Shown here piece after piece: positions 4,093 to 36,419 of a DNA stretch of 64,000 nt (position 1 is its first letter; every line of letters begins with the position of its first letter). The DNA comes from Macrostomum hystrix. Lineage: Eukaryota > Animalia > Platyhelminthes. The notes beneath the pieces were generated by a model. It was not told the origin of the DNA. It saw only the letters and a program-made list of their open reading frames with translations, and searched no databases. The stretch lies in NCBI GenBank assembly GCA_950097015.1, contig CATNEN010000011.1, forward strand, positions 620,001-684,000, in the 5' to 3' direction. The translations under genes were made by a program, and so were the position numbers.

Positions 4093-5157
4093 TCACCTAT
4101 GATAAATGTTGAATGTGCAGCCGGTGAACGTGCCACTGAAGCCGCCACTAGAACTAGAACTGCAAGTTGACAGATTGGTGGTTGAAGCTAAACTTACTTT
4201 ATTTTCACACCCAGCCTGACTTAATGCATCCGAAACGCATGCCAATTGGGACTCCTTCTTCTTTGAGTATCTTATGTACCGCTGGGTTGACACAACCGAA
4301 CGATGTCCCGTCACATGGCCGATGTCTTCCAGCGAAAAACTGGCGTTGTGCAGCTCAGTCACGACCGTTGCTCTGATGCAATGAGGCGCATACTTTCTAG
4401 ACAGTCCAGCCTTCTCAGATATTGTCTGCATCATTGATCCCAGCGTATTGTGTCCAACTGGCTGCTTGGCAAAATACCACGAGTCTGCGTTAAGCTTAGC
4501 CCTCGGCCGAATGAAGACGATGCTGTTCACGACACCTTCTCGGTTCTTAGCATTCGCGATCCTTTCCATGTAGTCTTTGAAGCAGCCCACAGGGCAGTCA
4601 GGTAAGCCGGTAGAAACCATCAGCACCTGTTTAGTATTTTTTGCTGCATTTTCCAAGTGTCCTCCATCAGTCTTTGTAGCCATCGGCCGCAACTTGATAG
4701 CCTCTTGCCCAGATGCAGTGATGATCTCTTCGAACGACTCAACTGTTAGGCGTCGAAACCACTCTCTCGCACGCAGCCCAAAATGAGTCATCATATTGTA
4801 ATAGAACTCATGCTGTAACTTTGCTGGAGTGCTCCGATCGAAATACTTTCGAAGCTTAGCTAGATCATTGTCTTCTATGGAGCTGAATCTCTTTACTTCT
4901 CCGCCGTTCTCCAGAAACAGTTTAGCAGCAGCTTTTAACATATTGTTCGCTTTTTTGAACAGCTGGTTAGATATGATATCCACTCCACGCACCCGAAGCA
5001 GCCAGCGATACAAACCGGCCCGGAAACAGCGCAAAGTAGCAGGTGCATAGTACCCACCGTCAGAGCGCTTGATAGTTCCATACGCAATCCGGATACAGGC
5101 CGCCAATCGCTCCTCTGCGCAGGTCTTAATGTCGACTTCAAGTTGAAGGGACTCCAT
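4093..5157 (-). CDS. Crypton tyrosine recombinase (DUF3504-like); N-terminal part probably continues in a shifted frame up to an acceptor at 5460
   Basis: Catalytic set visible: FGLRARE (R), TK, HCIRAT (HxxR), TGHRS (H), QRY (Y). Also CPV..F..Y and WY..QPVGHNTL motifs typical of Crypton/KCTD1/ZMYM DUF3504 domains. Confidence 0.88.
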   Translation of the reverse strand: MESLQLEVDIKTCAEERLAACIRIAYGTIKRSDGGYYAPATLRCFRAGLYRWLLRVRGVDIISNQLFKKANNMLKAAAKLFLENGGEVKRFSSIEDNDLAKLRKYFDRSTPAKLQHEFYYNMMTHFGLRAREWFRRLTVESFEEIITASGQEAIKLRPMATKTDGGHLENAAKNTKQVLMVSTGLPDCPVGCFKDYMERIANAKNREGVVNSIVFIRPRAKLNADSWYFAKQPVGHNTLGSMMQTISEKAGLSRKYAPHCIRATVVTELHNASFSLEDIGHVTGHRSVVSTQRYIRYSKKKESQLACVSDALSQAGCENKVSLASTTNLSTCSSSSSGGFSGTFTGCTFNIYHR

Positions 5158-5573: not shown

Positions 5574-7860
5574 CACCTTTTTGCACTCAAATTCGTCATT
5601 TCTGAAATCAAGTTCAATAAAACTGCATTCATATTCGGACAAACTCTATGGCTATACTTGTGAACTGCAAGCAAATACGGCAAACTGCATTCAAATTCGG
5701 CAAAATGCATTCAAAGTCGGCAAAATGCATTCGAATTCGGCAAACTGCATTCAAATTGGGCAAACTGCATTCAAATTCGGCACCAGCTCAACCAGATACA
5801 AAAATATCTATGGCACAAGTCCATAATATTGATCTAACTGCATTCAAATTCGCCAAACTGCAAGCAAATTCGGCAGCAGAAGTATGAGAGAAGGAATGGG
5901 GTGGAGTTGCTAATATGGCTGAGCTTGTTTTTACCCGAGAAAAGTTTAAAACCCTAGACATTTAGATTCTCATTTAGAATCATTTTGTCTATGGCAATCA
6001 GCAGCCACTGAAAGGACACGGGAAAGGGAAGTTACGTGTTAATCTCGTAAAAACACCCCCTTTTCCTTACTCCATGCAACACCAGCATCAATCATGGCAG
6101 CCCAAAACTACAAGCGAATCTCGAATGATGACAGGCATCGCCTGCTTGCAGCTCATCAGACAGGTGAGGACTACCAGACTCTGGCAAGACAGCTAGGAAT
6201 ATCAAGATCGACGGCGTACTCCATCGTGCAGTCTGGGCGTGGTGAGAAGCGTCCACAGGGAGGCCGACGAGTCAAGAAGTTTGACGAGGAAATGGAAGAT
6301 TTCTGCCGTGAAGTGCTTGACCTGAACTCACTTGAATCAATCAACGCATTCGAGCTCGCTTTCCAGACAAGCCGCTGGTAGATGAATCCACGCTAAGCCG
6401 ACACCTTGATGGAATGCTGTACACAGTCAAATTGGTACGCGACTGTCCTGCTGCCCGCAATTCTCCAGAAGTTATGGAGGAACGCTTTGCCTACGCCACA
6501 TGGTGGTGCTCTGCCGACGTCGTCAACCAGCCGAAGATATTTATCGATGAGTTCGGTTTCGACACGTGGAATCGGCGATCACAAGGGAGAGCGCAGCGTG
6601 GAGTTCGTGCTTATCGCGTGATAGGAGGCCAGCGAGGACCCCGACTGACGGTGTGCATGGCAATGTCGCCGCAAATCGGCGTCGTGCATTACCAATGCTA
6701 CAACAGGGGCATGACGAAAGAGCATTTTGCTGAGTTCCTGCAGATAACCATGGGAAACCTGGAGCATGCTCAGATCCAGCATCCAGCCTACATAATTTTC
6801 GATAATGTATCCAGTCATAATGACGCCGAACTGCAGGAATCTGTTGGCGCAATTGAATTTCGCAGGCTACCAAAATACAGCCCATTTCTGACTCCGGTTG
6901 AGAGCGCGATCTTCGGCTGGAAGGCAGCAATCAAGCAAGAGATCGCTGCCAATGCGGATAGTTTCATCAACCCGACCGCAGAGGCCCGCGCCGGAAGAAG
7001 TCTCGTGCAATTTAGGTTTGACGAGCTGCGCCGATTCGCTGATAACACCGTCATGACCGTTACACCAGCAAACTGCAATGCGTGGTACAATCACTGCTTT
7101 TCATTCGTGCCTCGCTGCCTTGCTCGGCAGGAAATTCTCGGTGACTAGTTGCTGAAACTGGCAAATGACCATTATTTTCGCATTGTTCGAACTTTTTTGA
7201 ATTGCTCACCAAAATGTTTCGAATTGTCCGGTTTAAATCTTGTTTGTGGTTCTTATTGGCCTATTTAAGTACTTTTCATTGTTTCACATATGCACTGTTA
7301 CTGTCTCTGTCATTAGAAAATGGTTTATTCAGTACTTAGGCACAGCACAATACACCCATTCCTTTTCTCATACTTCTGCTGCCGAATTGGCTTGCAGTTT
7401 GGCGAATTTGAATGCAGTTGGATCAATATGATGGGCTTGTGCCATAGATATTTTTGTATCTGGTTGAGCTGGTGCCGAATTTGACTGCATTTTGCCGAAT
7501 TTGAATGCATTTTGCTGACTTTGAATGCATTTTGCCGAATTTGAATGCATTTTGCCGACTTTGAATGCATTTTGCCGAATTCGAATGCATTTTGCCGACT
7601 TTGAATGCATTTTGCCGAATTCGAATGCATTTTGCCGACTTTGAATGCATTTTGCCGAATTCGAATGCATTTTGCCGAATTCGAATGCATTTTGCGACTT
7701 TGAATGCATTTTGCCGAATTTGACTGCATTTTGCCGAACTTGAATGCAGTTTGCCGTATTTGCTTGCAGTTCACAAGTATAGCCATAGAGTTTGTCCGAA
7801 TATGAATGCAGTTTTATTGAACTTGATTGCAGAAATGACGAATTTGAGTGCAAAAAGGTG
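5574..7860 (+). mobile_element. Tc1/mariner-IS630 superfamily transposon with long TIRs (~5574-5900 and ~7357-7860)
   Basis: Ends CACCTTTTTGCACTCAAATTCG...CGAATTTGAGTGCAAAAAGGTG are inverted, flanked by TA (5572-5573, 7861-7862). TIRs contain 20-bp internal tandem repeats (gcaaaatgcattcaaattcg). Confidence 0.95.
6094..7148 (+). pseudogene. Tc1/IS630-like transposase, frameshifted near 6350 (HTH 6094-6350; DDE domain to 7148)
   Basis: HTH region (LARQLGISRSTAYSIV) continues in another frame as RARFPDKPLVDESTLSRHLDGM. IFIDEFGF, IIFDNVSSH and YSPFLTPVE give a D,D(32)E triad. Confidence 0.88.
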
Positions 7861-8396: not shown

Positions 8397-8545
8397 GCAC
8401 GCAGTCCGTTGCTCTTTCGGCGGTCATTAATGGGGTTCAGGTACTTTCAGGTACCTGGTATCTGGTACCTGGTACCTGGTACCTGGTACCAGGTATCAGG
8501 TTCAGGGTTCATTAATGACCGCCGAAAGAGAAACGGACTGCGTGC
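8397..8545. repeat. Small fold-back (MITE-like) palindrome with a 7-bp GGTACCT tandem core
   Basis: 36-bp arms 8397-8432 and 8510-8545 are reverse complements with one mismatch. The core consists of (ggtacct)n units. Confidence 0.8.
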
Positions 8546-9447
8546 GTAATGGGGTTCATTAATGACCCCGTTAAGCCAACTAACACAGTCAGTAAGAAGT
8601 AGCCAAGTTGTTGAAAGACTTCATCAAATGGTACCGTGCCCAATATCAGAAACGTTCTCATCAGTAACGAGAACACCCCAACCGGTGCGTACCTTGGTTT
8701 AGTGAGGTGAGAGGTTACATCAAAGTTTAAATGACAACCCTTGAAAACGTTGCATTAAAATAAGATAAGTTTGAAATGGATTTTCCACGACTTATACGCT
8801 TGCGTCAGTTGTTGTTTGGGTTGGTTATGTATCAGTTCGAGATTGGGTCAGTTAGAGATAGGGTCAGTTGCTTTTTTGGTCATCAGATTGCACCGAGGAT
8901 TCACCAAGTTATGACCCGCACTATCATGCAGCAAGTGTCGTTGATGGCAACCGTCAGGTCAATCAGGTCTCGCGTCTGATTTGACAAGCGTTTAATCACC
9001 GAACCGAAGAATATTGAGAAACTGACGCAAGCTGAATTTGGGGTTGGGTTGCGCCTTAGTGACAGGCCAATTATGAAACTGAGCACATATGTGTAATATT
9101 CCAATCTAACATGTGTGCTCGGAATGTATGCTAGCTGTGCCTAGAACCGCGTGCATTGGCCCAACCAATTATCTGCCTGCGATAGATATTAAATAGGCGG
9201 GTAAAGCTTGCGGCTTTAACCGCTTTTAATGTTTGAGCAATCCGCCTCGCTACCTTCTCTTTACCAGTCACTCTGCTCACCTAGCTGTACATCCTAGTTT
9301 GCGCTACCTTGCGTGTTTTACGTACTGAGCGTGTGCACTATCACCACCACCCCTAATTCCCGGGGCACGTGCCTACCACGTAGTTTTATTTGACAACTCT
9401 CTCAGCGTGAGAGGGTGTCGCTGCTGCTCAATTGTCAAAATTTTGGA

Positions 9448-10515
9448 ATGGATCACTTTTTATCAATGACTTCGCGCCAATTATCTGAGCACCTAGAATC
9501 GCTCGGCTGCAGCGTAGAGGAAAGTGCATCAGGTACCAGAGGCGACAAGATAATGAAGATTCTGGCACGGCAGAAGGACACCACCACGGCAACCGACCAA
9601 AGCTTCCAAGCCCGAGTTGACCAGCTGCTCGAGACAGCTGCTAGCGGAGGGTCGACGACAGAGCAGATCGACACCAGCAGGACGGGGCTCGCTGCAGCTG
9701 CTGGACCTGGTGATGAGGACGTCGAGGTGGAGATTCGGGCGGCGCAGCAGCGCATCCGACTGCTTCAGCTGAGGCGGGAGGAAGCTGCCCTGCGTTCTGA
9801 GCTCGAGTCCCGCACAGCCGCGCCGCAGCCAGCCGGAAATGACCGGGGTGAGTGGCGATCAGTTCTTAGCACCTTGCTGTCGCAAGACACAGGGGAAAGC
9901 GCGAAGGCCCGGGAACCCCGGCTAAGTAAACCTCTGTTAGTCACCGATTTCCTCTGCAGGGAAGGCTCAGGTGAGAACACAGTGGTGCATAGCCGCTCAG
10001 GTGACTTGGTATTTAAAGGCAACAAGGCAGTTAGCCCTGAAAACGTCAGTCTGGCGCAATGGATTGTCGGTAACGCCAAGGTGCTGGACTGTATGCTAAG
10101 CAGAGGACAGCTGGTGCGAACTGGTGCAGATGGGCAGCCCGATGTATCCGAACTGCGACAGTACCTGAAGTACAATGTCCAGATTGGTGAACTGGCAGAG
10201 GCTGGTTTTGGAACGGCCAAAATTATGCGCTTTGACGAGAGTTACCGCATCAATCAGCACAACAGCGACCTGCCGTGGGCCACCGAGTCTTTTCAGCTGT
10301 TCGCCAGGCACCTGCTAGCCCCAGACAGCGCCAGCGACACTCGCTTCCAAAAGCCCAAGTTTTTGCAGTATGCAGCAAACCGTCCCGTCTGCAACAATTT
10401 CAACGCCAACAAATGCTTTCGCAAAGCCTGTCACTTCCAACACATTTGTAAAATCTGCAAGGGCAACCACCCGGCCTGCGCGCACGAGCCGGGCACAGAA
10501 GCTTCAAAAAACTGA
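9448..10515 (+). CDS. gag: Ngaro gag-like ORF1 with C-terminal Cys/His zinc-knuckle region
   Basis: First ATG lies immediately after repeat A1. Coiled-coil segment, ..FDESYRINQ..W motif, and C-terminal CNNFNANKCFRKACHFQHICKICKGNHPACAH. Confidence 0.85.
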   Translation: MDHFLSMTSRQLSEHLESLGCSVEESASGTRGDKIMKILARQKDTTTATDQSFQARVDQLLETAASGGSTTEQIDTSRTGLAAAAGPGDEDVEVEIRAAQQRIRLLQLRREEAALRSELESRTAAPQPAGNDRGEWRSVLSTLLSQDTGESAKAREPRLSKPLLVTDFLCREGSGENTVVHSRSGDLVFKGNKAVSPENVSLAQWIVGNAKVLDCMLSRGQLVRTGADGQPDVSELRQYLKYNVQIGELAEAGFGTAKIMRFDESYRINQHNSDLPWATESFQLFARHLLAPDSASDTRFQKPKFLQYAANRPVCNNFNANKCFRKACHFQHICKICKGNHPACAHEPGTEASKN

Positions 10516-10604
10516 GCACGGAGGCCAGCCAGCGGCCCCCTAGCAAGGAGACCGTCAGCGAGCTGGCCCAGCTCCCTAGTTTTAGTCTTTTAAACCCTCA
10601 AGTA

Positions 10605-12257
10605 ATGTCCGAAGCCGCGCTTTCTTGCTCCGGGCTGCACAATGCGTTATCTGTTTGGGAAGAAGAGTTGCAGTTGGACCCTGACGCTGAGTTCATCTTG
10701 AATGGTATAAGAAAAGGTTTCGAAATCACCAACCAGGGCAACATCCTCGCAGCTAGCGAAGAAAACCACAGATCCGCTACCTGTCCTGAGAATCGTGATC
10801 AAGTTGAGGAGCTTATCCTGAACGAGCTAAAGAACAGCAGATACATGCTAGTGAAAGATAAGCCGCACATCATCAGCCCCCTGGGAGCTGTGGCCAAGTC
10901 CTCTGGTGGCCTTCGGCTGATCCACGACGCCAGCCTGCCTCGGGGCCGAAGCATCAATGAGTATTTCAAGCAGGACAAAAAGCTTCGCTTTTCGACAGTC
11001 AGCGCGTTTACTAAGAAACTGAAGCTGGGTTGGTTTATGGCAAAAATCGATCTGGCCAAAGCCTACCGCTCCTGTCCTGTAAGCTCTACGGCCTACTCAA
11101 TCACAGGACTCCGGTGGACCTTCAGCGGCGAGAGTAAGCCCAGGTACCTCGTCGACACGTGCCTCGGCTTCGGGTTTGCTGCTAGCGTCAACATATTCCA
11201 CCGGCTGTCGGAAGCTGTCAAGCGCATGATGGTTCGGCGAGGTCACCTAGTTATCTGCAATTATCTCGATGACTTTGCCGTTGCCGCGAACACACGGGAA
11301 GCCTGCCAGGAAGCCTATAGCACACTCCTGAATCTGCTGCGCCGCCTGGGCTTTGCAATTAACTGGGAGAAGCTATCTCCACCCAGCAAGTCCATGGTCT
11401 TTCTCGGCATCCACATCGATACGGCTGCAGGCCGCCTGACTCTCCCGCAGGAGAAACTCGAATCTTTGCAGAGTTTGCTGGACGCCGCAGCTGCCAGCAA
11501 GCGACTCAGCAAAAAGCAACTGCAAAAGCTTTGCGGAAAAATCGGTTGGTTTTGCGAGGTCGCCCGCGCTGGTAGATCGTTACTTCGGGGCCTCATCAAC
11601 CTGACCAACAGCCTAGATTTGCCTCACCACAAGATGCGCATCGAAGGTCAACTTGGTGAGCAACTGCGTTTCTGGCGATCAGCGACAAACTGGATGCATG
11701 GAATTGAATTGTGGCCGGCCTTCTCGAACCGGCTGGTGGTTGAAACAGACGCATGTCTGGCAGGTGGTGCTGCGGTCATTTCTGATGGAGCTAATACCGA
11801 CTGGATTTACGTGAATTGGTTAGCTGACTTCAACAGTGCTTTGTACGGTCTGCACATCAACTACCTGGAGTGTGTGATGCCTTTGATTTTTATTATCCTA
11901 TTCAAGGAGCGCCTAGCTAACTGCCACGTTGTCTTTTACACCGACAACTCATCCGTTGCCGGGATGCTGCGCAAGGGCTCTGCCAAGCCGCCGGTGGTTC
12001 AAGCGCTGATGCGCACGGCTGTTTTACTCGCGCTAAAGCACCGCATTCACTTCGAGGTGTTTCATGTCCCTGGCCGTTATCAAATTTTTAGTGACCCAGC
12101 TTCTCGTCAGAACCACAAGCATGGACTCATTAACTTTTTATTTCGCTACTATGGCACAATCTACATCGACCCTTCTGTTATCGCATCGCACGCCCTGTCT
12201 GCTGCTTCCTGTCAATCTCTCCTTTCACAGGTTCAGCGGCTGCAGCGGAGCCCCTAA
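10605..12257 (+). CDS. Ngaro reverse transcriptase-RNase H (frame open from 10452, overlapping the gag end in the -1 frame)
   Basis: RLIHDAS, AKIDLAKAYR, LGFG, YLDDF, FLGIHID; RNase H motifs ETDAC, HINYLE, YTDN, SDPASR. Confidence 0.95.
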   Translation: MSEAALSCSGLHNALSVWEEELQLDPDAEFILNGIRKGFEITNQGNILAASEENHRSATCPENRDQVEELILNELKNSRYMLVKDKPHIISPLGAVAKSSGGLRLIHDASLPRGRSINEYFKQDKKLRFSTVSAFTKKLKLGWFMAKIDLAKAYRSCPVSSTAYSITGLRWTFSGESKPRYLVDTCLGFGFAASVNIFHRLSEAVKRMMVRRGHLVICNYLDDFAVAANTREACQEAYSTLLNLLRRLGFAINWEKLSPPSKSMVFLGIHIDTAAGRLTLPQEKLESLQSLLDAAAASKRLSKKQLQKLCGKIGWFCEVARAGRSLLRGLINLTNSLDLPHHKMRIEGQLGEQLRFWRSATNWMHGIELWPAFSNRLVVETDACLAGGAAVISDGANTDWIYVNWLADFNSALYGLHINYLECVMPLIFIILFKERLANCHVVFYTDNSSVAGMLRKGSAKPPVVQALMRTAVLLALKHRIHFEVFHVPGRYQIFSDPASRQNHKHGLINFLFRYYGTIYIDPSVIASHALSAASCQSLLSQVQRLQRSP

Positions 12258-13273
12258 GGACGGAACGAGACCGGCTGCTCAACCAAGCTCTGGCACCGAA
12301 TACGAGACGAGCACTACGGTCCCAGCTAGCCTGCTGGGAGCGCTTCTGCACCGACATCAGCGTGCACCCTCTAGAGGCCGATGGACCGACGGTGTCACTC
12401 TACGTATCACACCTACACCTCAAGCACCTGACCTCATTCGCCAGCTTCCCCGCCTACCTGCACGCGGTGTCGTGGCTCTACAAGCTGGCTGGGAGGGCCG
12501 ACCCGACTGCCCACCCTCTAGTGCGCCTTGCCCTTCAAGGCGTCAAGCGGCAGCGCGGCGCCCATGCGAGACAAAAAGCCGGTCTGACCCCCGCCATGCT
12601 GCTGCAGCTCAGGTCACACATCGACACAACATCCTGCCGCGGCGCGGCCTTCTGGTGCTGTCTGCTGGTCGGCTTCTGGGGTCTGCTGCGTGCGGACAAT
12701 CTGTGCCTCTCTTCTGAATCAGCCGCCCGGAGCCCGCAGTCTTCAGCCAGGGCGGTGCGGCTGAAAGACCTGCAGCTGTGCAACAGCGGCATCGAGCTGC
12801 GAATCCGTCACAGCAAGACCATCCAGTTCGCTCAGCGTGAGCACATGGTCTGGCTGCCACGATTGCCCACCGCGAATGGGTCTCGTCATCCGCTCTGCCC
12901 GTTCAACGCGGTCCTCCTTCACCTCAAGCTCAATAATCTCGCGGAAAACGGACTCGACTCGATCCTGTTTGCCTTTCGATCGGGCCAACGACGGGTCCCG
13001 GTATGTCGATCGCAATTTACCAGACAACTATTTAAAGCGGCGACAGCGGCTGGCCTCGACCCGACAACAATCTCCGGGCACTCATTGCGCAGAGGCGGAG
13101 CGACATTTTTCGCCAGCTCAGGAGCATCAGTGCAAGAAGTTATGGCTTTGGGAGACAGGCGCAGCGACTCCGTGTTCCGCTACATCAAACCGGGTGATGA
13201 GGGGCGCCGGCGTGCGGTAGACGCAGCATCTGCCCACATCATCAGCTGCCACCCATCCCCTCACCGCTTTTAA
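12231..13273 (+). CDS. Ngaro tyrosine recombinase (no in-frame ATG; frame open from 12134)
   Basis: Reading upstream of the tracked ORF gives LRTERDRLLNQALAPNTRR..WERFC, a SAM-like N-domain start. Then GLLRADN (R), SKTIQF (K), GHSLRRGGA (HxxR), GDRRSDSVFRY (Y; the H/W position is R). Confidence 0.9.
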
Positions 13274-14128
13274 CTTTTTTTTTTGGCCTTGGGCCTGCGT
13301 CGCCATGTTCGTACCGCCACTTTTCTCGCCTCCGCCTCTTTGATCTGGACATTAATAGGCGGGTAAAGCTTGCGGCTTTAACCGCTTTTAATGTTTGAGG
13401 AATCCGCCTCGCTACCTTCTCTTTACCAGTCACTCTGCTCACCTAGCTGTACATCCTAGTTTGCGCTACCTTGCGTGTTTTACGTACTGAGCGTGTGCAC
13501 TATCACCACCACCCCTAATTCCCGGGGCACGTGCCTACCACGTAGTTTTATTTGACAACTCTCTCAGCGTGAGAGGGTGTCGCTGCTGCTCAATTGTCAA
13601 AATTTTTCTTTCTTCTTTTTGCTTTTACCTCCGGTCGTTTTATTTCTTCGTCTAAAAATACACTGCTTAATGCTTAATCGCTTTAGGGCCTGCGTCGCCA
13701 TGTTCGTACCGCCACTTTTCTCGCCTCCGCCTCTTTGATCTGGACATTAAACTTACCAAGCAAGCTCATCTCTTCATCATATCTAATCTTGTTCTGCACT
13801 AAGCCATTGGTGCCTTCGCTGTATATTACAGAACTTTTTTTTGCGAAATTCTTCTTGAAGTAAACCATCTGGGAAAATATTTCTGAAATGGGGCACTTCA
13901 GTGAGAATCAAATTATATTATAAGTTGTAAGTTTATTTATTCTTAGTCTACTCTATATTGTAAGCATCAAGGGATATGGATCGGTAATTCACTCCATGCA
14001 GAAAGAACCAATGGATTTTTATTGCTAATCCGCTCTATGCAGCACAGATAATATATAACTATAATATATATATTATGTTTGGTTGTATAGTATGTTTAAC
14101 TATAACTATATATTATATATTATCTGTG

Positions 14129-16758
14129 CCATGCAGTAGACCTCAAGGGATTTGAATTGCTAATCTACTCCATACAGAAGGTATCGAGGGATTTGAATTG
14201 CTAATCTACTTCATGCAGAAGGTATCAAGGGACTTGGATTGCTAATCTACTCCATACAGAAGGTATCAAGGGATTTTAATTGCTAATCTACTCCATGCAG
14301 AAGGTATCAAGGGATTTGAATTGCTAATCTACTCCATGCAGAAGGTATCAAGGGATTTGGATTGCTAATCTACTTCATGCAGAAGGTATCAATGGACTTG
14401 GATTGCTAATCTACTCCATGCAGAAGGTATCAAGGGACTTGGATTACTAATCTACTCCATACAGAAGGTATCAAGGGATTTGGATTGCTAATCTACTCCA
14501 TGCAGAAGGTATCAAGGGATTTGGATTGCTAATCTACTCCATGCAGAAGGTATCAAGGGATTTGAAATGCTAATCTACTCCATGCAGAAGGTATCAAGGG
14601 ATTTGGATTGCTAATCTACTCCATGCAGAAGGTATCAAGGGACTTGGATTGCTAATCTACTCCATGCAGAAGGTATCAAGGGATTTGGATTGCTAATCTA
14701 CTCCATGCAGAAGGTATCAAGGGATTTGAATTGCTAATCTACTCCATGCAGAAGGTATCAAGGGATTTGGATTGCTAATCTACTCCATGCAGAAGGTATC
14801 AAGGGATTTGGATTGCTAATCTACTCCATGCAGAAGGTATCAAGGGATTTGGATTGCTAATCTACTCCATGCAGAAGGTATCAAGGGACTTGGATTGCTA
14901 ATCTACTCCATGCAGAAGGTATCAAGGGATTTGGATTGCTAATCTACTCCATGCAGAAGGTATCAAGGGATTTGGATTGCTAATCTACTCCATGCAGAAG
15001 GTATCAAGGGACTAGGATTGCTAATCTACTCCATACAGAAGGTATCAAGGGACTAGGATTGCTAATCTACTCCATGCAGAAGGTATCAATGGACTTGGAT
15101 TGCTAATCTACTCCATGCAGAAGGTATCAAGGGATTTGGATTGCTAATCTACTTCATGCAGAAGGTATCAAGGGATTTAGATTGCTAATCTACTCCATAC
15201 AGAAGGTATCAAGGGACTTGGATTGCTAATCTACTCCATACAGAAGGTATCAAGGGATTTTAATTGCTAATCTACTCCATGCAGAAGGTATCAAGGGATT
15301 TGAATTGCTAATCTACTCCATGCAGAAGGTATCAAGGGATTTGGATTGCTAATCTACTTCATGCAGAAGGTATCAATGGACTTGGATTGCTAATCTACTC
15401 CATGCAGAAGGTATCAAGGGACTTGGATTACTAATCTACTCCATACAGAAGGTATCAAGGGATTTGGATTGCTAATCTACTCCATGCAGAAGGTATCAAG
15501 GGATTTGGATTGCTAATCTACTCCATGCAGAAGGTATCAAGGGATTTGAAATGCTAATCTACTCCATGCAGAAGGTATCAAGGGATTTGAAATGCTAATC
15601 TACTCCATACAGAAGGTATCAAGGGACTTGGATTGCTAATCTACTCCATGCAGAAGGTATCAAGGGATTTGGATTGCTAATCTACTCCATGCAGAAGGTA
15701 TCAAGGGATTTTAATTGCTAATCTACTCCATGCAGAAGGTATCAAGGGACTAGGATTGCTAATCTACTCCATACAGAAGGTATCAAGGGACTTGGATTGC
15801 TAATCTACTCCATGCAGAAGGTATCAAGGGATTTGGATTGCTAATCTACTCCATGCAGAAGGTATCAAGGGACTTGGATTGCTAATCTACTCCATGCAGA
15901 AGGTATCAAGGGACTAGGATTGCTAATCTACTCCATACAGAAGGTATCAAGGGACTAGGATTGCTAATCTACTCCATGCAGAAGGTATCAAGGGATTTGG
16001 ATTGCTAATCTACTTCATGCAGAAGGTATCAAGGGATTTAGATTGCTAATCTACTCCATACAGAAGGTATCAAGGGACTTGGATTGCTAATCTACTCCAT
16101 ACAGAAGGTATCAAGGGATTTTAATTGCTAATCTACTCCATGCAGAAGGTATCAAGGGATTTTAATTGCTAATCTACTCCATGCAGAAGGTATCAAGGGA
16201 CTAGGATTGCTAATCTACTCCATACAGAAGGTATCAAGGGACTTGGATTGCTAATCTACTCCATGCAGAAGGTATCAAGGGACTTGGATTGCTAATCTAC
16301 TCCATACAGAAGGTATCAAGGGATTTGGATTGCTAATCTACTCCATGCAGAAGGTATCAAGGGACTTGGATTGCTAATCTACTCCATGCAGAAGGTATCA
16401 AGGGACTAGGATTGCTAATCTACTCCATACAGAAGGTATCAAGGGACTAGGATTGCTAATCTACTCCATGCAGAAGGTATCAAGGGATTTGGATTGCTAA
16501 TCTACTTCATGCAGAAGGTATCAAGGGATTTAGATTGCTAATCTACTCCATACAGAAGGTATCAAGGGACTTGGATTGCTAATCTACTCCATACAGAAGG
16601 TATCAAGGGATTTTAATTGCTAATCTACTCCATGCAGAAGGTATCAAGGGATTTGAATTGCTAATCTACTCCATGCAGAAGGTATCAAGGGACTTGGATT
16701 GCTAATCTACTCCATGCAGAAGGTACCAAGGGATTTGGATTGCTAATCTACTCCATGC
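14129..16758. repeat. 41-bp minisatellite array, about 64 units
   Basis: Unit gctaatctactccatgcagaaggtatcaagggatttggatt with period 41 (e.g. 14282 to 14323). One further unit at ~17455-17488. Confidence 0.98.
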
Positions 16759-18520: not shown

Positions 18521-21500
18521 TCATCGAATGATGTTCAAAGTTGTGCTATCGTCATTATCTAACGGTGGAGCTTCAATTTCGGAAGCAGTGGCTTTGAAGA
18601 TTGCGGCGTCGGTCGAATAGTTTAGCGGGTTCGCATCCTCTTTCACCTGTTCGCTGCACAAGTGGGCCACAATGCAGGCTCCAACTGCGTCGCCGAGTAC
18701 ATTGATCGAAGTACGAATGCGATCTCTGCATTGTTTGTTTAGAGGCGTCTTATTGTTGATGCTAAGAGATGAAGCACCAAGGGGCAGACGTTTTCTAGAA
18801 ATTTTAGGACTCTAGAAATATAATTATTTTTGGAAAGCTATGGGAAAATTTGAGCCTGGATTCTGTTTTTTTATGGCAATTCATTGAATATAATTAGAGG
18901 TACAGAATAAAACGGTGGGTACTTAAATTACCCCCCGTGGTTTTTCTACAGTTAATGACACGTGGACATACTAAAATTATCATAAAATAGGCATAAAAGT
19001 CCTTTCTAATGCTTTTCTCACTCTTCCGCTTATGATTTAAGCTTACAGCAGCCAATCGACAGCCAAGATGAGAGGGATGTCATTAAGCGGTAGATTGACT
19101 GAATTCAGCACGGTTACCAAGGTGATTAGTCTAGCGCCGGGCACACTAGTGGCTCCCATGGCCACAAAGGTGACTGTAGAGCTGCGGGTAAACCATTTTT
19201 AGGGGCGCGGATGCAAGTTTTGTGAACGGAAATGTTGCAAGTTTGCTGCAAGTTGGCTGTGAAGCTACGGGTAAACCATTTTTTGGGGGCGCAGATGCTA
19301 GTCTTATATACTAAAATGCTGCAAGTTGGCTATGAACTGTTCTAAATTTATCTCACAAATGCACTTTGTTTGTTTGCTGGCCAACGGACAAGGGAATAAA
19401 ATAAGCTAGCTAGAAAGCTATGGATGGCCAAAGCTATGGATTGGAACTACCCACCCTCCCCAAGACGTCGATCAATACAAATATAGCCACATCGAATGAA
19501 AGATCGACTCGTGGCACACTATACTCGTAACAACCGAGGCTAAACATTGTAGTCTCGGTTTTCCAAGAGATTCCAGCACCCTCTAAAGCTGTATAAAACA
19601 GAATATGCAATTTTTAAGCAATAAACTGATGGGAAGAAGTTACATTACATAATTTTCCTCGACGGTTATGTGGGAACCCTAAGGGGTTGAAGCACGGCAG
19701 TTAGAGCTTTTGACTTTTTACTGAGGCCGGGAGTTCAAATCTCAGTCAAAGAAAAATAAAGGTATCATTCTGAAGGGAAATTTAATCCCCAATGGCTTCA
19801 GTCGCAGATTTTTTGTAATAGCATTAGCTAGGGTTGAATTTGGGTGGTGTGATAATGCAATGAACTCAGCTTTTAGAAGCAGCGGCTGTGCCACTGGTTG
19901 CACTACCAGGTTATATGTAAAGGTCTCTGTCTTTTTTAGCAGTATTAGTACTAATAATAATCATATATATCATTAGAATTATTCGAAAGCAGCACAAACT
20001 AACCAGGTAATTATAATCTGGCTGAAGTTCAGCGCCATTTTGTTGATCTGAGCAATGAAGATAAATGCAACAGCCTCGTACAATGCGGTACCGTCCATAT
20101 TAATTGTAGCCCCAATCGGCAGCACAAACCGGGTGATGCGCCGATGAATTTTAAGGTTTCCCTCGAGACACTTTAATGTGACCGGCAGGGTTGCTGAAGA
20201 CGACGCAGTGCTCAGAGCGGTTAGCCAGGCTTGGAACATACCCTTGAAGAATATCAGCGAATTCTTTCTCGTCAGAACCAAGTAAATGAGGTTCAGCGTT
20301 ATTAGAGAGTGAATAAGTTGGCCGGATGTCACAGTGATCACAAAGAAAACCATGTTGCGCATTGTGGACATCAGGTATTTGTCCTCCAGCAGCTTGGCGG
20401 TGATCAGAAAGTAAATGCCAACTGGCGTGTACCTGCAGGTCCACAAGAGCGTTAGTAACAATAATAATTGCAAGGTGCCTGTGGTCAGTACAACTGCAAT
20501 GCGCACGCGGGTTGCATGCCGCCTAGACTTCAAGCACGAGTGACGCGTTCTGATTAACTGGTGGGTTTACTGTCTGTCTCAAATGGGTCTAGGCTGGGGT
20601 GGGGGTTGTTAGCGTGACTGCCTACTTGTATCTTAGTGCGCCAAGCCTTTTCAAACCTCCGTTTTTTACTTTCTGAATTACTCCTGAATTACTCCCGGTT
20701 CAGAATTACTTCTGAACCGCTGTGTTCTTTCTTTGGCCGCGCTGCCTCAGCACTTGGCGGCAGTAGACTCACAGCCAGAGAGAGGCAATACAGCCAATGC
20801 ATTTCGCTGACTCCGCTGAGCACAGATTCTCATTGACTAACACCTGCCCTGGCTTTTACATCACGTTAAGCAGTCCCATGCAGTGATCCTAATGGGCGTA
20901 AATTGCGCTACAAGCCCCTTTACCATCTCTCCGTCTCTCCATGGCTGCGCCCTAAATTAATATGGCCACAAGAGCTCAGGGACATAGGTGCGAAAGTCAA
21001 ACGCGTAAACCTAGCAAGCACTAACCATGATGAAGTGAGCTATGAAGTAGATAAGTAAACGATTTGAGTAAATAAGTAAGTAAACAAGTAAGTAAACAAC
21101 TACATCTTAGAGCATGCACCTAGGTTAGTAAAAAGTGAGCTTGATTAAAAACTTACCACATGACAGCTCTGTTCATAACGATGACAACATCGTTCAGTAC
21201 CTTGACTAGTTGCACCAGCATTTTTCCTTTTTCCGGCATGTTTCTCAGAACGGCTCCGAAAAATAATGAGACACTCACTAAACCTAAAGACAAATTCGCA
21301 AAGATGCTGGAACTTTATAATCGCAATTAAAAGTATTCAAAATATGTGCGAGTAATTGAAAAAAATATATATTAATTTAAAAGAAAGAAATTTATAAACT
21401 AAATTATTTTACAATGGTAGCAAAATACCAACCAATTGCATTTGGAACATCCACTTTTGTATTTTTGAATTTATCGACCAGCCTCCACGATTGGCCGTCA

Positions 21501-25169: not shown

Positions 25170-28100
25170 TCAGCGCAGTGTTTTACGCCTACGCAGTCGT
25201 TCAAGGCTGGCTTCAACGGAGGCAGCCGCTCCGCTACCAGCCTGCTGCGCGCCGGCAGACAGTCGGCGCTTCTTTGTAGCCGAAGCAGCCCCAGCAGCAG
25301 CGCCGCTCTTCTGCGCCGCCTCTTTCTGAGGCGGCTTCTGCTTTGATTTAGCTGCCGAATTTGTAGCAGTAGCGGTAGATACTACTACCGGCGCAGCGGC
25401 AGCAGTAGTAGCCGTTGATCTGGTCTGTCTGCGCGATCCGGCTGAACCTAAAGTTGGCGTTGGTGCACCGGCGCTGGCCTGATTCGGTGTCACAGGCAGG
25501 TAGAAACTAACCGGATTAGGATCAGCTGGTGTTGGCCCGTCGGCAAAGGCGGCAGCAGCAGCAGCGCCACCTGGGGATCGTTTAAATGCCGGCGAAAACA
25601 GTGTGCGATCACTGGCCTGCCGCTTCAGCGACTGTCCGATGCTTGGCTTAGCAGTAAGCGCGGATGGCGTTCTTCCAGAAGCAGCAGTGGCAGTTTTCGC
25701 AGCGTGACCGTGAGCATTAGTGCCTGGCCTGTTAGCATTCTGCCATTTTTCGCAATGAACCAGCAGATCCTGCAGGCAGATTGGCTGCTCGGGCTCAACG
25801 CTGACTTCGCCTTCGACAAGAGTTGGGGAGTCGCGTTGTAGGCCGAGTCTGGCTAGGGTGAGGTCACGCTGCTCGCTGCGCAATTGGGACATTGGCCTGC
25901 CAGGAGGATCCAGCATGACAACTAGGGCGGTAATGTTGTCAGCGCGAAGGTCGGCCCGCATCCAGCGATGCATCGCCAGTTGAACTAGGCTGCCACTGGG
26001 GTTGTAGAAAAAGTTAGGCGGCACGTCCGGGTCGGTAAACACCTATGTGGCGGGGCGTTTGATAGATTCAACTGGCCGTTAATTAAGGCTTAACAATTTT
26101 GATTTGGTGGGCTAAGAACGATCGATTTAAAGGGCGAAGAATGGTTGATTTAGGGATGGATAAAAATCTATTTAAAATCGGTTTAGGGGCAAAGAATGAT
26201 CGATTTGAGACACTAGTAAGTCAGCAATATACAAGTCAAGGGATGACCAATCAAGGAAGCTAGGCAATTAGGTACTAACCTTGAGCTCTGTAGATCTTTC
26301 GCAGATTCGGACCATCTCCACAGCGCTATCGGGAGCCACCATATTCCAGAGTCCGTCAGATCCCAATATTAAGCACTTGTGCTTATTATAATCCAAATTT
26401 ATGCACTGTACATCTGGTTCAGGTGAGACGTGAAATTGTGACGATTCCTTGTCGTAGGACCAAAGATCGCCGAGTGAGCGAGCCACGGCTAGGAATGGCA
26501 CAGGAACAGTTTCAAACTGCTTCGATGACTGCATCTGAGGTGAGTCTCCGATAGCTGCCGGCCTGCGCCACACTACTCTGTAGACGCCGCCTCTCTTCAT
26601 TAAGCTACCGCCGGCTCGTTCGATTCTCTCCCGCTCCTTGGGATTCGACGGCTTGTGCTCAACTGTTAGAGTCTGGGCTTGCCAGAGATCGCGTGACTGT
26701 TCGCGATTATCGCGACAGCCTAGCACAATGGCCGAGTCGCCAACGTGGCCAATGTACAGTTTGCGATTGCGCACAATCGCTATGGATGCTGTGGTGCCAG
26801 CTGTACTGTCAAGACCGCGAACAGTCTTGGCCCAACTGCCTGTTCATTTAGAGTTAATAGATACGAATGTAATTGCTAATTAGAAGCTGTTAAATTAAAT
26901 AAGTTACTATGACCATAAAGTTAATTTTTTTAAAGTGTACATATAATGTCAATATTATGTGTGGCACTTGCATAGCTTGACATAGTTCTCATTTTCTCAT
27001 AGTTCTCATAGTTTTGGGAACTATGTTAAGCACCTAAACTGATGAATTCTAGCAAACGTAAGCAGCAAGAGCCCTTAAAAAGAGAAATGAGAAAATTACA
27101 TAGATTGTGAGGCTGATTTTAGAGGATCAGATGGTAGAAATGTAGGAATCACTCTTTTTGTGAAAGATAAAAAAACGAATGCCATAAAAAATACACAAAA
27201 ATGAAAAATGATATATTCATGACCAAAATATATGTTGAAACACAATACATACCCACCATACCCAATCTATATATATAAAAGTGAAAACTCTGTCTGTCTG
27301 TCTGTGTGTGTGTGTGTGTGTGTGTGCAACCTTTTGTCTTTATAGACGCCGAAACCGCTCAACCAAATCGCACCAAACTTTGCACATACCTAAAACCACC
27401 TACGCTGAGTGCAATAGGCTACTCAAATTCCCGAAAAATCATTTCCTTCCTGCTCAAAAGTGCAAAAAACTGCTCAAAAATCGTCAAAAAATCACTCAAT
27501 TCGACATATCGTCGCCCCACTTTGTCAGATTTTCTCCAAATTTGATCCACTTACACTTTACATGTTTTCCAACAATGCTATCAAATTTTGAACATCTCTA
27601 CACAATCCAGAGCAAAGCTGCATCATCTCAAAGTGAGTCACTTTTTGTTTTCCGAGGGCAGCCACCCCAACTCCCCTCCGCCACTCTGCGGGCCAAATTT
27701 TATTACAGCCACCCCCTCCCTTCCCCGGGCGCCGAAGCCCCAGACTGCACATTGTATTTCAAGCCGTGAATGTACACAGCCCAAACCCCTAGACTGTCTA
27801 CTGGCCCCCAAGCAGCACTGAGACTGAGTGCGGTGAGTGCGGTGGCGTCCCAGTGCGCAGGGCTCTCCGGTCGATATTTGGGTGAGACAGTACAGAAATG
27901 ATGCCGCCAACGAAATTAACTACCAACTGCTTCAGGAGTTGCCAGGTGCAGTTTTCACCTACAAGTCAATTGAGACAACGTTGACTGATGACACCGCTGT
28001 GGAGTATCCTGTTGAGTTTCTGAACTCTCTAGATCCTCCTGGAACTCCATCGCACAACTTGCAGCTGAAAGTTGGGGCACCAACTATGCTCCTCCGCAAC

Positions 28101-34143: not shown

Positions 34144-36419
34144 CTAGCTTTTTTTTGCCCGTTGTTTTTGGGGCAGAAATTTAAAGCAAAGCAGTAAGCA
34201 ATTCACGTCTCTGTATTAACTTTATAGTGAAGGTCACCATTTATTTAAGTGAATTTATTTAAGTGAAATGAAAAGTGAAGAGTTTGTTTAAGGGCGTTTT
34301 AAGTAAAAAATAAGTGAAAAGTTTGTCCAAACAGCCCCTCTTGATTACTTCATTAGAAACATGTCTCTTAGCCACTCCTCTATACAGTCAGTGGCAGATC
34401 CAGGAATTTTGTTTTGGGGCGGTCTGTCAGGGGAGCGCCATGAGAATCACAGAGGGGGTGCCAGCGGCCGAAAAAGGGCGCCAGGAGCCAAGAAAGGGCG
34501 CCAGCGGCTGAAAAACGGGAGCCAGCGGCTGAAAAAGGGGCGCCAGCGGCCGAAAAGGGGCGCCAGTGCTGCGACTGGCGCCCCTGGTGGGGGCATCTTA
34601 TTACCATGATTAAAATTTAGGGGGGCGACTGCCCCCCCGCCCCCCCTAAATCTGCCTCTGTATACAGTATGCATGTACACGCGTATACATAAGGAAAATA
34701 GCCATGGCATAACAATAACAATGTCAAAGAAACAAAATTAAACTGTTTCAGAGTTCAGAGTTAGACAGGTCAAGGTCAATTCGTGACTACTTTTCTATTA
34801 ATTGCTTGCGAGTCACCTCAAGGCCTGGGGATACACCATATTCTTCGTTCTTCCCCTTGGTGCGAAAATGAATAGGCCAGCTGGAGTTCCAACACGGGAG
34901 CAGGCGACATAAAGCTGCCCATGCGAGAAGCAAGGAGTCTCCAGGTTGATGCCAGCCACCTTCAGCGACTGTCCCTGAGCCTTGTTAATAGTCATCGCAA
35001 AGCACACTCTCACAGGGAACTGCAGTCGCTTGAACTGAAATGGCAGGTCCATGGGGATAATTGGAATCCGGGAACGAACACAGACTCTCCTCTGCCAGAT
35101 CCAGTCATTATCGTGGCCTCAATCACGTGTGGGAAGAGCCGCCTGACTATCAGTCTGGTGCCGTTACACAGCCTTGGCGCATTCAGGTTGCGGAGGAGCA
35201 TAATTGGTGCCCCAACTTTCAGCTGCAAGTTGTGCGATGGAGTTCCAGGAGGATCTAGAGAGTTCAGAAACTCAACAGGATACTCCACAGCGGTGTCATC
35301 AGTCAACGTTGTATCAATTGACTTGTAGGTGAAAACTGCACCTGGCAACTCCTGAAGCAGTTGGTAGTTAATTTCGTTGGCGGCATCATTTCTAGGACAC
35401 AGAATTGCCCTCTCTGACAGCCAGTCAACGTCAGCATATCGAACCATTAGGTTCGGGTAAACTTTTGCCTTGAGCTCCTGCACTGACTGCACAATGGTTC
35501 CGATTGTAGCGATCGATGACTGCCCATCCTCGGTGCTAATCTCCAGCAGACCATTGCCAATTCGCAATAGATTGGCAGAGAACTCATGAGCTGTTTCGTC
35601 TCCTTGAATTGTAGCTCTCATGTTTTGTTCGTAGGTGCAACTTCACAACCGATGGCCACAGGTGAGATGATTTTAGGCAAGCATTAATCTCATCAGCAGG
35701 AGTGCCACGCGGAATCACAGGCAGCGTCTGTCTAAAGTCTCCAGACAGCAGCAGTGACACCACCCATCAGTTGATCGCCAGCCTCTCTCTTTCTTCTATC
35801 CCAGGCTGGCTGGAGAGAAATATCGACCGGAGAGCCCTGCGCACTGGGACGCCACCGCACTCACCGCACTCAGTCTCAGTGCTGCTTGGGGGCCAGTAGG
35901 GGTCTAGGGGTTTGGGCTGTGTACATTCACGGCTTGAAATGCAATGTACAGTCTGGGGCTTCGGCGCCCGGGGAAGGGAGGGGGTGGCTGTAATAAAATT
36001 TGGCCCGCAGAGTGGCGGAGGGGAGTTGGGGTGGCTGTCCTCGGAAAACAAAAAGTGACTCACTTTGAGATGATGCAGCTTTGCTCTGGATTGAGTAGAG
36101 ATGTTCAAAATTGACAGCATTGTTGGAAAACATGTAAAGTGTAAGTGGATCAAATTTGGAGAAAATCTGACAAAGTGGGGCGACGATATGTCGAATTGAG
36201 TGATTTTTTGACGATTTTTGAGCAGTTTTTTGCACTTTTGAGCAGGAAGGAAATGATTTTTCGGGAATTTGAGTAGCCTATTGCACTCAGCGTAGGTGGT
36301 TTTAGGTATGTGCAAAGTTTGGTGCGATTTGGTTGAGCGGTTTCGGCGTCTATAAAGACAAAAGGTTGCACACAGACAGACAGACAGACAGACAGAGTTT
36401 TCACTTTTATATATATAGA
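34144..36419 (-). mobile_element. Non-autonomous Helitron B carrying the middle and C-terminus of the helicase (frameshifted)
   Basis: Same TC...CTAG termini as Helitron A, in opposite orientation. Fragments SGDFRQTLPV, RAILCPRN, LCNGTRL, QGQSL, VYPQALR. Confidence 0.9.
34389..34660. mobile_element. hAT MITE copy inside Helitron B
   Basis: Same element and same 8-bp TSD context (TATACAGT) as 28624-28895. Confidence 0.88.

What the first reader, a model, noticed from the sequence alone, without database searches (positions are those of the whole stretch)
10452..10605. Textbook -1 ribosomal frameshift signal (slippery heptamer plus H-type pseudoknot) at the gag/pol junction of a Ngaro-type tyrosine-recombinase retrotransposon
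Seen: gag ends GCT TCA AAA AAC TGA, giving A_AAA_AAC at 10506-10512 in the gag frame. The -1 frame is the RT frame and is open from 10452 through 10605 into RT. After a 7-nt spacer, stem 1 is GGAGGCC (10520-26) / GGCCCCC (10534-40) with one mismatch. Its loop GCCAGC (10528-33) pairs perfectly with GCTGGC (10562-67), with L1=1 and L3=21. An alternative 7-bp pairing of GGCCAGC with GCTGGCC is also possible. Established: X_XXY_YYZ plus a 5-9 nt spacer plus a pseudoknot is the retroviral/coronaviral -1 PRF architecture. Inference: this element makes a Gag-RT/RH fusion by recoding. How DIRS-order elements express their overlapping ORFs is poorly resolved, so a clear, testable signal is valuable.
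Basis: partly seen in the sequence, partly recalled or inferred. Interest (0 to 1): 0.85.

Follow-up and report, generated by a model that had tools for sequence, protein, structure and literature searches.

The report
Frameshift site in a Ngaro retrotransposon
A young Ngaro-type (tyrosine-recombinase) retrotransposon ends its gag gene with the classic slippery sequence A_AAA_AAC, and the same motif sits at the same gag/RT junction in a dozen distant relatives, so a -1 ribosomal frameshift that makes a Gag-RT fusion is well supported, while the proposed pseudoknot remains unproven.

Summary
The element (9192-13750) has Ngaro-type split direct repeats, gag, RT/RH and a tyrosine recombinase. Gag ends ...TCA AAA AAC TGA, and the RT frame is the -1 frame, open from 10452.

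The heptamer is supported by comparison with relatives:
- I analysed the gag/RT junctions of 81 related loci (27-46% RT identity).
- A_AAA_AAC lies in the gag frame inside the short -1 overlap in 13 independent lineages. In the formal test it was 8 of 14 lineages against 0.06 expected.
- The codon before it varies (TCA, ACA, CCA, GCA, GAA) but always ends in A.
- Two lineages carry G_GGA_AAC or G_GGU_UUU instead.
- 11 of the 13 lineages have no ATG from which RT could start on its own.

The "textbook H-type pseudoknot" is not established. It is the best crossing fold by a crude enumerator (8 of 1000 shuffles as good). A nested hairpin (10520-10575, same 7-nt spacer) is predicted about 8-12 kcal/mol more stable. 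Relatives show no shared downstream structure, and no alignable copies exist to test covariation.

Verdict: a known mechanism in an element class where I found no published description. Other relatives have in-frame stops or +1 overlaps with UUU_CGU at the same junction.

The parts
9192..13750 (+). Whole Ngaro-type YR retrotransposon (4559 bp), single copy in the window
   Evidence: Self-blastn finds split direct repeats bounding gag, RT/RH and YR. Pfam gives RVT_1 and Phage_integrase. tblastn of its proteins finds no other copy in the window.
9192..9444 (+). Repeat A1 (253 nt), 99.6% identical to A2 at 13354-13606
9448..10515 (+). gag ORF (355 codons plus TGA) with a Cys/His-rich, zinc-knuckle-like C-terminus; open and unbroken
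   Evidence: It is homologous to the upstream ORF of all 40 relatives tested (phmmer 39 of 40, jackhmmer 40 of 40).
10506..10512 (+). Slippery heptamer A_AAA_AAC in the gag frame
   Evidence: The same heptamer is at the same junction in 12 further lineages. Enrichment is 8 observed against 0.064 expected. It is listed among the most shifty heptamers on mammalian ribosomes (PMC5009743).
10513..10515 (+). gag stop codon TGA, directly abutting the heptamer
   Evidence: A stop directly follows the heptamer in 6 of the 13 A_AAA_AAC lineages.
10513..10519 (+). 7-nt spacer between the heptamer and the first predicted helix
10520..10575 (+). G+C-rich predicted stimulatory structure.
   Evidence: This is a prediction only, with no covariation data.
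10452..12257 (+). RT/RH reading frame (-1 relative to gag), open from 10452. First ATG at 10605. Conserved N-terminal motif (W-E-x-E-L) from 10653. No internal stop or frameshift.
   Evidence: RVT_1 E 2.6e-14. Weak RT_RNaseH hit, E 0.029. Relatives align over residues 2-549.
12362..13273 (+). Tyrosine recombinase ORF (303 codons, one frame). No ATG before residue 79, and it does not overlap the RT ORF.
   Evidence: Phage_integrase E 2.8e-6. YR ORFs of 18 relatives align to this single frame only.
13291..13355 (+). Repeat B1 (65 nt), 100% identical to B2
13354..13606 (+). Repeat A2
13686..13750 (+). Repeat B2

Best explanation
The full-length element RNA is translated from the gag AUG at 9448. 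Most ribosomes stop at UGA 10513-15 and release Gag. A minority slip back one base on A_AAA_AAC (10506-12), with both the P-site and the A-site tRNA re-pairing. Those ribosomes continue in the -1 frame through a roughly 49-codon linker into RT/RH, ending at 12257, and so make a Gag-RT/RH fusion at a fixed low ratio.

The very G+C-rich stretch 10520-10575, 7 nt downstream, probably forms a stable structure that pauses the ribosome over the heptamer.

Shown: the sequence anatomy, and conservation of the site among relatives. Inferred: the slippage itself, its efficiency, and the role and form of the structure.
For: 1. The anatomy is exact: heptamer in the gag frame, RT in the -1 frame, open across the site.
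2. A_AAA_AAC is at the equivalent position, in the gag frame, in 13 lineages whose RTs are only 34-46% identical to this one: WIN, L007, L025, L026, L029, L031, L032, L037, L038, L062, L076, L078 and L082.
3. Enrichment is 8 observed against 0.064 expected in the 14 -1 lineages of the formal test.
4. The constraint is on nucleotides, not amino acids. The preceding codon is TCA, ACA, CCA, GCA or GAA, always ending in A.
5. Two lineages have other canonical heptamers at the same place: G_GGA_AAC (L015) and G_GGU_UUU (L039). With A_AAA_AAC, these are three of the four heptamers named most shifty on mammalian ribosomes (PMC5009743).
6. In 11 of the 13 A_AAA_AAC lineages there is no ATG in the RT frame between the heptamer and the conserved RT N-terminal motif. 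None has a stop there. RT therefore cannot start on its own in those elements.
7. The sister lineage L076 (43% RT identity) has the same TCA AAA AAC plus stop arrangement. Its linker is about the same length (50 against 49 codons), it has no ATG in the linker, and it has a G+C-rich hairpin after a 5-nt spacer.
8. In the window, 13 ATGs lie between the gag start and 10605, so leaky scanning to 10605 is implausible.
9. The 60 nt after the stop are the G+C peak of the element.
Against: - There is no direct evidence: no RNA, ribosome-footprint or peptide data.
- This copy, unlike most relatives, does have an in-frame ATG (10605) 16 codons before the conserved RT motif, with a purine at -3. Independent initiation is therefore not excluded here.
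- The downstream structure is not conserved among relatives. Several have no predicted structure better than shuffles.
- The lineages are phylogenetically related, so the enrichment statistic overstates independence.
- One related clade (L014 and L022 groups) has a -1 overlap with no canonical heptamer. Frameshifting on a heptamer is therefore not universal in the family.
Confidence: 0.8

Rival explanations
1. The frameshift occurs as above, and its stimulator is specifically the reader's H-type pseudoknot (S1 10520-26 with 10534-40; S2 10528-33 with 10562-67), not a hairpin.
For: - It is the top-scoring H-type pseudoknot found by my enumerator at a 5-9 nt spacer.
- Only 8 of 1000 dinucleotide shuffles score as well.
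- The loop geometry (L1=1 over a 6-bp S2, L3=21 over a 7-bp S1) is sterically ordinary. That judgement rests on established knowledge.
- The competing hairpin is no more stable than composition predicts (106 of 1000 shuffles).
Against: - Stacking energies are S1 -13.0 and S2 -14.3. With usual pseudoknot penalties the total is about -11.7 to -15.5 kcal/mol, against -23.6 for the nested hairpin with the same 7 nt left single-stranded. The penalties are recalled values and approximate.
- About 6 other places in the same element score equally well.
- No relative, including the sister L076, shows a comparable pseudoknot.
- No Rfam family matches.
- No pseudoknot-aware program was available.
Confidence: 0.3
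2. RT/RH is made independently of gag from the ATG at 10605, on a spliced or subgenomic RNA or by reinitiation. The heptamer is then irrelevant in this copy.
For: - An ATG exists at 10605 with G at -3, 16 codons before the conserved RT motif.
- Some gene-called relatives also begin with an ATG a few residues before that motif.
- The stop-free -1 frame between the heptamer and 10605 is not significant in itself.
Against: - Eleven of the 13 heptamer-bearing lineages, including the sister L076, have no such ATG.
- Gene callers pick an ATG wherever one exists, so the starts are biased.
- Thirteen upstream ATGs and a 355-codon upstream ORF make scanning or reinitiation 90 nt downstream unlikely. 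That inference combines established knowledge.
- This explanation does not account for conservation of the heptamer and of the A in the preceding codon.
Confidence: 0.1
3. The frame change is made by RNA polymerase slippage on the run of six A residues, which would add one A to part of the transcripts, not by the ribosome.
For: The heptamer contains six consecutive A residues. One inserted base would bring the RT frame into register.
Against: - Relatives carry G_GGA_AAC and G_GGU_UUU at the same position. These are tandem-slippage heptamers with no long homopolymer.
- The conserved unit is the frame-specific heptamer, including the final C, not simply a run of A.
- Six A residues is short for slippage by a cellular polymerase. 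That rests on established knowledge and was not tested.
Confidence: 0.03
4. The motif and stems are coincidental features of a dead copy and have no function.
For: - There is a single copy in the window.
- The structure statistics are borderline.
- How YR is expressed in this copy is unclear.
Against: - The terminal repeats are 99.6% and 100% identical.
- gag, RT/RH and YR are each open in one frame.
- The heptamer is conserved across many lineages.
Confidence: 0.05

Closest known systems
gag-pol (gag-pro) -1 programmed ribosomal frameshifting of retroviruses and animal LTR retrotransposons
   Same: - An X_XXY_YYZ heptamer lies at the end of gag, pol or RT is in the -1 frame, and a downstream structure follows a short spacer.
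[quoted passage not shown]
- That review reports 28 of 51 animal LTR retroelements with pol in the -1 frame.
   Different: - This element belongs to the DIRS order. It has a tyrosine recombinase in place of a DDE integrase, no protease, and split direct repeats in place of LTRs.
- The review text held contains no mention of DIRS or Ngaro.
- The stimulatory structure is not conserved among relatives, and in 6 of 13 lineages the stop codon abuts the heptamer.
Described Ngaro-like elements (for example Xenopus DIRS-53_XT, and fungal and Cafeteria Ngaros)
   Same: - gag-like ORF, RT/RH ORF and YR ORF, with split direct repeats A1...B1-A2-B2 (PMC9210276; PMC6681497; PMC8547959).
- Overlapping ORFs are reported for the Xenopus families.
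   Different: - The papers I could read give no recoding signal. [quoted passage not shown]
- This copy has no fourth (SGNH hydrolase) ORF.
- No named Ngaro reference sequence came back from any tool, so relatedness to named families was not measured.
Stem-loop stimulators of -1 frameshifting
   Same: A stable hairpin a few nucleotides after the heptamer can replace a pseudoknot (title and abstract of PMC3203594). The predicted fold here is such a hairpin after a 7-nt spacer.
   Different: This is a prediction only. The hairpin's stability is what its 73% G+C content would give by chance.
+1 frameshift motif UUU_CGU and stop-codon readthrough context UGA_CUAG
   Same: - Sister clades of the same element family have, at the same gag/RT junction, a +1 overlap with a conserved CGU UUU CGU in the gag frame (L002, L003, L008, L011).
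- Others have an in-frame UGA followed by CUA(G) (L001, L077, L079).
- Both motifs are published recoding signals (PMC3498833; PMC12817336 and 10.1101/2021.04.18.440353).
   Different: These are not present in the window element. They show only that the family as a whole relies on recoding at this junction.

Membership tests
Ngaro-type YR retrotransposon (DIRS order) | Encodes reverse transcriptase and a tyrosine recombinase, without DDE integrase or aspartic protease | tested here: met
   RVT_1 E 2.6e-14 and Phage_integrase E 2.8e-6, with no other Pfam hits in the element's ORFs.
Ngaro-type YR retrotransposon (DIRS order) | Split direct repeats in the order A1 - ORFs - B1 A2 B2 | tested here: met
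   A1 9192-9444 matches A2 13354-13606 (99.6%). B1 13291-13355 matches B2 13686-13750 (100%). The pattern is as described in PMC6681497 and PMC9210276.
Ngaro-type YR retrotransposon (DIRS order) | No methyltransferase domain after RT/RH (separates it from DIRS1-like and PAT-like elements) | tested here: met
   The RT/RH ORF is 550 codons with no methyltransferase hit. The criterion comes from PMC3266345.
Ngaro-type YR retrotransposon (DIRS order) | RNase H domain following RT | tested here: inconclusive
   RT_RNaseH E 0.029, 14.9 bits against a cut-off of 24.8, but it covers profile positions 2-100 of 105. Relative P0022 carries PF17917.
Ngaro-type YR retrotransposon (DIRS order) | RT/RH groups with named Ngaro reference elements in a phylogeny | not tested
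   No named Ngaro reference was returned by any tool. The relatives are unnamed metagenome, Logan, coral and flatworm sequences.
Canonical eukaryotic -1 programmed ribosomal frameshift site | X_XXY_YYZ heptamer in the upstream (0) frame within the overlap | tested here: met
   A_AAA_AAC at 10506-10512 in the gag frame.
Canonical eukaryotic -1 programmed ribosomal frameshift site | Downstream ORF in the -1 frame, open across the site | tested here: met
   Open from 10452 to 12257.
Canonical eukaryotic -1 programmed ribosomal frameshift site | Downstream ORF lacks its own initiation codon | tested here: not met
   In this copy an ATG lies at 10605, 16 codons before the conserved motif. The feature is met in 11 of the 13 heptamer-bearing lineages.
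Canonical eukaryotic -1 programmed ribosomal frameshift site | Evolutionary conservation of the heptamer at the junction | tested here: met
   Thirteen lineages with A_AAA_AAC, plus G_GGA_AAC and G_GGU_UUU variants. Eight observed against 0.064 expected.
Canonical eukaryotic -1 programmed ribosomal frameshift site | Stable RNA structure 5-9 nt downstream | tested here: inconclusive
   A structure is predicted at a 7-nt spacer. Its significance is borderline, and it is not shared by relatives.
Canonical eukaryotic -1 programmed ribosomal frameshift site | A trans-frame product is actually made | not testable with these tools
   No expression, footprint or peptide data are available.
H-type pseudoknot frameshift stimulator | Two helices in crossing topology with feasible loop lengths | tested here: met
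   S1 has 6 bp plus 1 mismatch, S2 has 6 bp, and L1=1, L2=0, L3=21.
H-type pseudoknot frameshift stimulator | The pseudoknot is the favoured fold over nested alternatives | tested here: not met
   About -11.7 to -15.5 kcal/mol against -23.6 for the hairpin. The energy model is crude, and no pseudoknot program was available.
H-type pseudoknot frameshift stimulator | Covariation supporting both stems | not testable with these tools
   The closest relative shares 43% RT identity and its linker cannot be aligned. There is no second copy in the window.

The most novel reading that the evidence does not exclude
Ngaro-like retrotransposons of metazoans, as a group, express RT by translational recoding at the gag/RT junction, and they have switched repeatedly among all three classical modes. 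The modes are:
- a -1 frameshift on A_AAA_AAC (probably ancestral in the main clade, with G_GGA_AAC and G_GGU_UUU replacements);
- stop-codon readthrough (UGA followed by C, or by CUAG);
- a +1 frameshift on UUU_CGU.

Many of the -1 sites appear to work with little or no conserved 3' structure, often with the stop codon directly abutting the heptamer. This would be the first recoding signals defined for the DIRS order.
Probability: 0.45. Interest if true: 0.65.

Novelty: new member of a known kind. Interest (0 to 1): 0.5.

Why it matters
Gag-pol frameshifting is a textbook mechanism, so the mechanism itself is not new. For tyrosine-recombinase retrotransposons, however, the papers I could read record only that ORFs overlap or do not overlap. 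They give no expression mechanism.

A defined, conserved heptamer brings several benefits:
- It gives annotators a rule for joining gag and RT calls in Ngaro-like elements.
- It explains why many RT ORFs in databases lack a start codon.
- It sets the expected Gag to Gag-RT ratio logic for this order.
- It offers the recoding field a natural series of related elements that use -1, readthrough and +1 solutions at one homologous junction.

For this window, it also marks the copy as young and apparently coding-competent.

Tried and rejected
- **Same-family copies for covariation.** There were none in the window. The best protein relative is 43% identical. The single metagenome scan returned only 27-46% relatives. 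The stems therefore could not be tested by covariation.
- **Rfam.** There was no match at gathering threshold in the whole window, and only chance-level hits around the site.
- **Pseudoknot-aware folding.** No such program is installed. I wrote a crude H-type enumerator with stacking energies from ViennaRNA and penalties recalled from memory, so its numbers are approximate.
- **A shared downstream structure in relatives.** Nested-fold z-scores range from -1.8 to +1.6, and pseudoknot scores are mostly nil. I rejected this as a family feature. There is only a mild G+C excess after the heptamer.
- **Amino-acid conservation (Lys-Asn) as the reason for the motif.** I rejected this because the preceding, variable codon always ends in A.
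- **Goodwin and Poulter 2004.** The original Ngaro paper could not be read. It timed out and then proved not to be held. Prior mention of a frameshift there cannot be excluded.
- **A tblastn alignment of P0001 beyond the RT stop.** It crossed 7 stops at low identity, and I discarded it as unreliable.
- **P0016.** Its contig gave no DNA.
Full report
**1. The observation**

- gag starts at ATG 9448 and ends GCT TCA AAA AAC TGA. A_AAA_AAC therefore occupies 10506-10512 in the gag frame, and the stop occupies 10513-10515.
- The frame that encodes RT is -1 relative to gag. It has a stop at 10449-10451 and is then open to 12257, with its first ATG at 10605.
- Both stems, the 7-nt spacer, L1=1 and L3=21 are as described.
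- The alternative 7-bp pairing exists too.

**2. The element**

Self-comparison shows split direct repeats.
- A1 (9192-9444) matches A2 (13354-13606) over 253 nt at 99.6%.
- B1 (13291-13355) matches B2 (13686-13750) over 65 nt at 100%.
- This is the A1-ORFs-B1-A2-B2 order described for Ngaro-like elements (PMC6681497; PMC9210276).

The coding content fits a Ngaro-type element.
- Pfam finds RVT_1 in 10605-12254 and Phage_integrase in 12362-13270.
- There is a weak full-length RT_RNaseH match.
- No methyltransferase, protease or DDE integrase hit was found.
- gag, RT/RH and the conserved part of YR are each open in a single frame. I counted no internal stops or frameshifts in any of the three.

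The element (9192-13750) is therefore a young, apparently coding-competent Ngaro-type copy. It is the only copy in the window.

**3. Relatives**

- The RT/RH ORF finds only distant relatives, at most 43% identity. They include a Logan contig, Macrostomum lignano and the coral Oculina patagonica.
- An alignment of those relatives (A1) retrieved 74 metagenome loci.
- Eight more loci came from protein look-ups.
- For every locus with the RT N-terminus, I located three things: the frame of RT, the point where that frame opens, and the long upstream ORF.
- All 40 upstream ORFs tested are homologous to this gag. The junctions are therefore homologous gag/RT junctions.

**4. The heptamer is conserved**

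The 41 loci with a long gag ORF fall into 26 non-redundant lineages. Fourteen of those lineages have RT in the -1 frame.
- Eight of the 14 carry A_AAA_AAC in the gag frame inside the overlap. The expectation is 0.064, from the rate in gag interiors (2 in 8820 codons; any canonical heptamer, 12 in 8820).
- Truncated contigs and the extra look-ups raise the total to 13 lineages: WIN, L007, L025, L026, L029, L031, L032, L037, L038, L062, L076, L078 and L082.
- The codon before the motif is TCA, ACA, CCA, GCA or GAA. The amino acid changes, but the third base is always A, which is the signature of a nucleotide-level constraint.
- L015 has G_GGA_AAC and L039 has G_GGU_UUU at the same place.
- In 11 of the 13 A_AAA_AAC lineages the RT frame has no ATG between the heptamer and the conserved W-E-x-E-L motif. 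In none does it have a stop there.
- A rough neighbour-joining tree places the window element next to L076 and scatters the A_AAA_AAC lineages over the main clade.
- L076 shares TCA AAA AAC followed directly by a stop, a linker of 50 codons (49 here), and no ATG in the linker.

**5. The structure is not settled**

- The minimum-energy nested fold of 10513-10575 is a long hairpin whose main helix is 10523-29 with 10562-68 (-26.8 kcal/mol, z -2.2).
- With the first 7 nt held single-stranded, the hairpin still gives -23.6 kcal/mol.
With customary pseudoknot penalties, which I recalled and which are approximate, it totals about -11.7 to -15.5 kcal/mol.
- The pseudoknot is the best crossing fold my enumerator finds. 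Only 8 of 1000 dinucleotide shuffles match it.
- The hairpin is no better than composition predicts (106 of 1000 shuffles).
- Along the element, 41 of 3826 positions, in about 7 places, give an equal or better pseudoknot score. About 5.6% of positions give an equal or better hairpin.
- The 60 nt after the stop are 73% G+C, the top 0.2% of such windows in the element.
- Relatives show no common downstream structure. L076 has a G+C-rich hairpin after a 5-nt spacer.
- Rfam has nothing.

I therefore keep "a stable structure 7 nt downstream" as likely. I leave hairpin against pseudoknot open, with neither clearly ahead.

**6. Rivals**

- **Independent initiation at 10605.** It is possible in this copy but is not the family's way. 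Scanning would have to pass 13 ATGs.
- **Polymerase slippage on the six A residues.** It does not explain the G_GGA_AAC and G_GGU_UUU variants.
- **Chance.** It is excluded by the comparative data.

**7. What is known**

- The papers I could read on DIRS-order elements note ORF overlaps or their absence. They give no recoding signal (PMC3783388; PMC3266345; PMC9210276).
- The recoding review has no mention of DIRS or Ngaro in the text held.
- Full-text searches for Ngaro with "frameshift" or "slippery" found nothing relevant.
- The original Ngaro paper is not held, so an earlier remark there cannot be excluded.

**8. Steps left out, and a slip**

- I did not write out or build the trans-frame product, and no query mixed two frames.
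- Slip: in my reasoning I recalled from memory a few short recoding motifs of known viruses and elements before papers showed them. In tool calls I used only motifs that my own locus outputs displayed (UUU_CGU, UGA CUAG, A_AAA_AAC).

**9. Verdict**

The -1 frameshift reading is well supported (0.8). The pseudoknot claim is unproven. The finding is a new member of a known kind, of moderate interest.

Noticed in passing
L002, L003, L008, L011 (gag/RT overlaps): A basal clade of relatives has RT in the +1 frame. It has a conserved CGT TTT CGT in the gag frame inside the overlap. UUU_CGU is a published +1 frameshift motif (title of PMC3498833).
   Followed up: partly
L001, L004, L006, L010, L013, L016, L020, L054, L077, L079, L081: These relatives have gag and RT in the same frame, separated by a single stop. 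It is mostly TGA followed by C, with TGA CTA G in L077 and L079 and TGA CTA in L001. That looks like programmed readthrough (the UGA CUAG context is named in PMC12817336 and 10.1101/2021.04.18.440353). Most have no RT-frame ATG.
   Followed up: partly
L014, L017, L018, L019, L022, L023, L024, L044: This clade has a -1 frame relation and a 79-85 nt overlap, but no canonical heptamer. An RT-frame ATG lies inside the overlap, and a conserved CCC CAA sits near the gag stop. How RT is expressed there is unexplained.
   Followed up: no
window 12257-12600: The YR ORF (12362-13273) has its conserved part starting at the first codon of the open frame. It has no ATG before residue 79 and lies about 100 nt after the RT stop. 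In 28 of 35 relatives the RT and YR ORFs overlap by 49-247 nt, in +1 or -1. Expression of YR in this copy is unexplained.
   Followed up: partly
window 14129-16758: A 41-bp tandem array of 64 copies at 94% identity begins about 380 nt after the element's right end. The window holds many other minisatellite arrays, for example 55032-56819 and 59637-61130.
   Followed up: no
window 4093-5157 (-): A 354-aa ORF with Phage_integrase plus DUF3504, which looks like a Crypton-type tyrosine-recombinase DNA transposon.
   Followed up: no
window 6414-7148 (+); 27837-28466 (+); 35010-35621 (-): Other mobile-element remnants: a DDE_3 transposase ORF and two Pif1 2B-domain ORFs that may be Helitron fragments.
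   Followed up: no
window 19979-20533 (-); 39547-40626 (+): Probable host exons: a sodium:dicarboxylate symporter (SDF) segment, and an EF-hand_2/EF-hand_3/ZZ (dystrophin- or dystrobrevin-like) segment of 359 codons. The host looks like a metazoan. It is not human-like, and the species was not identified.
   Followed up: no
window 8397-8545: A 36-nt inverted repeat (97% complementary, 77 nt apart) with a palindromic centre lies about 650 nt upstream of the element.
   Followed up: no
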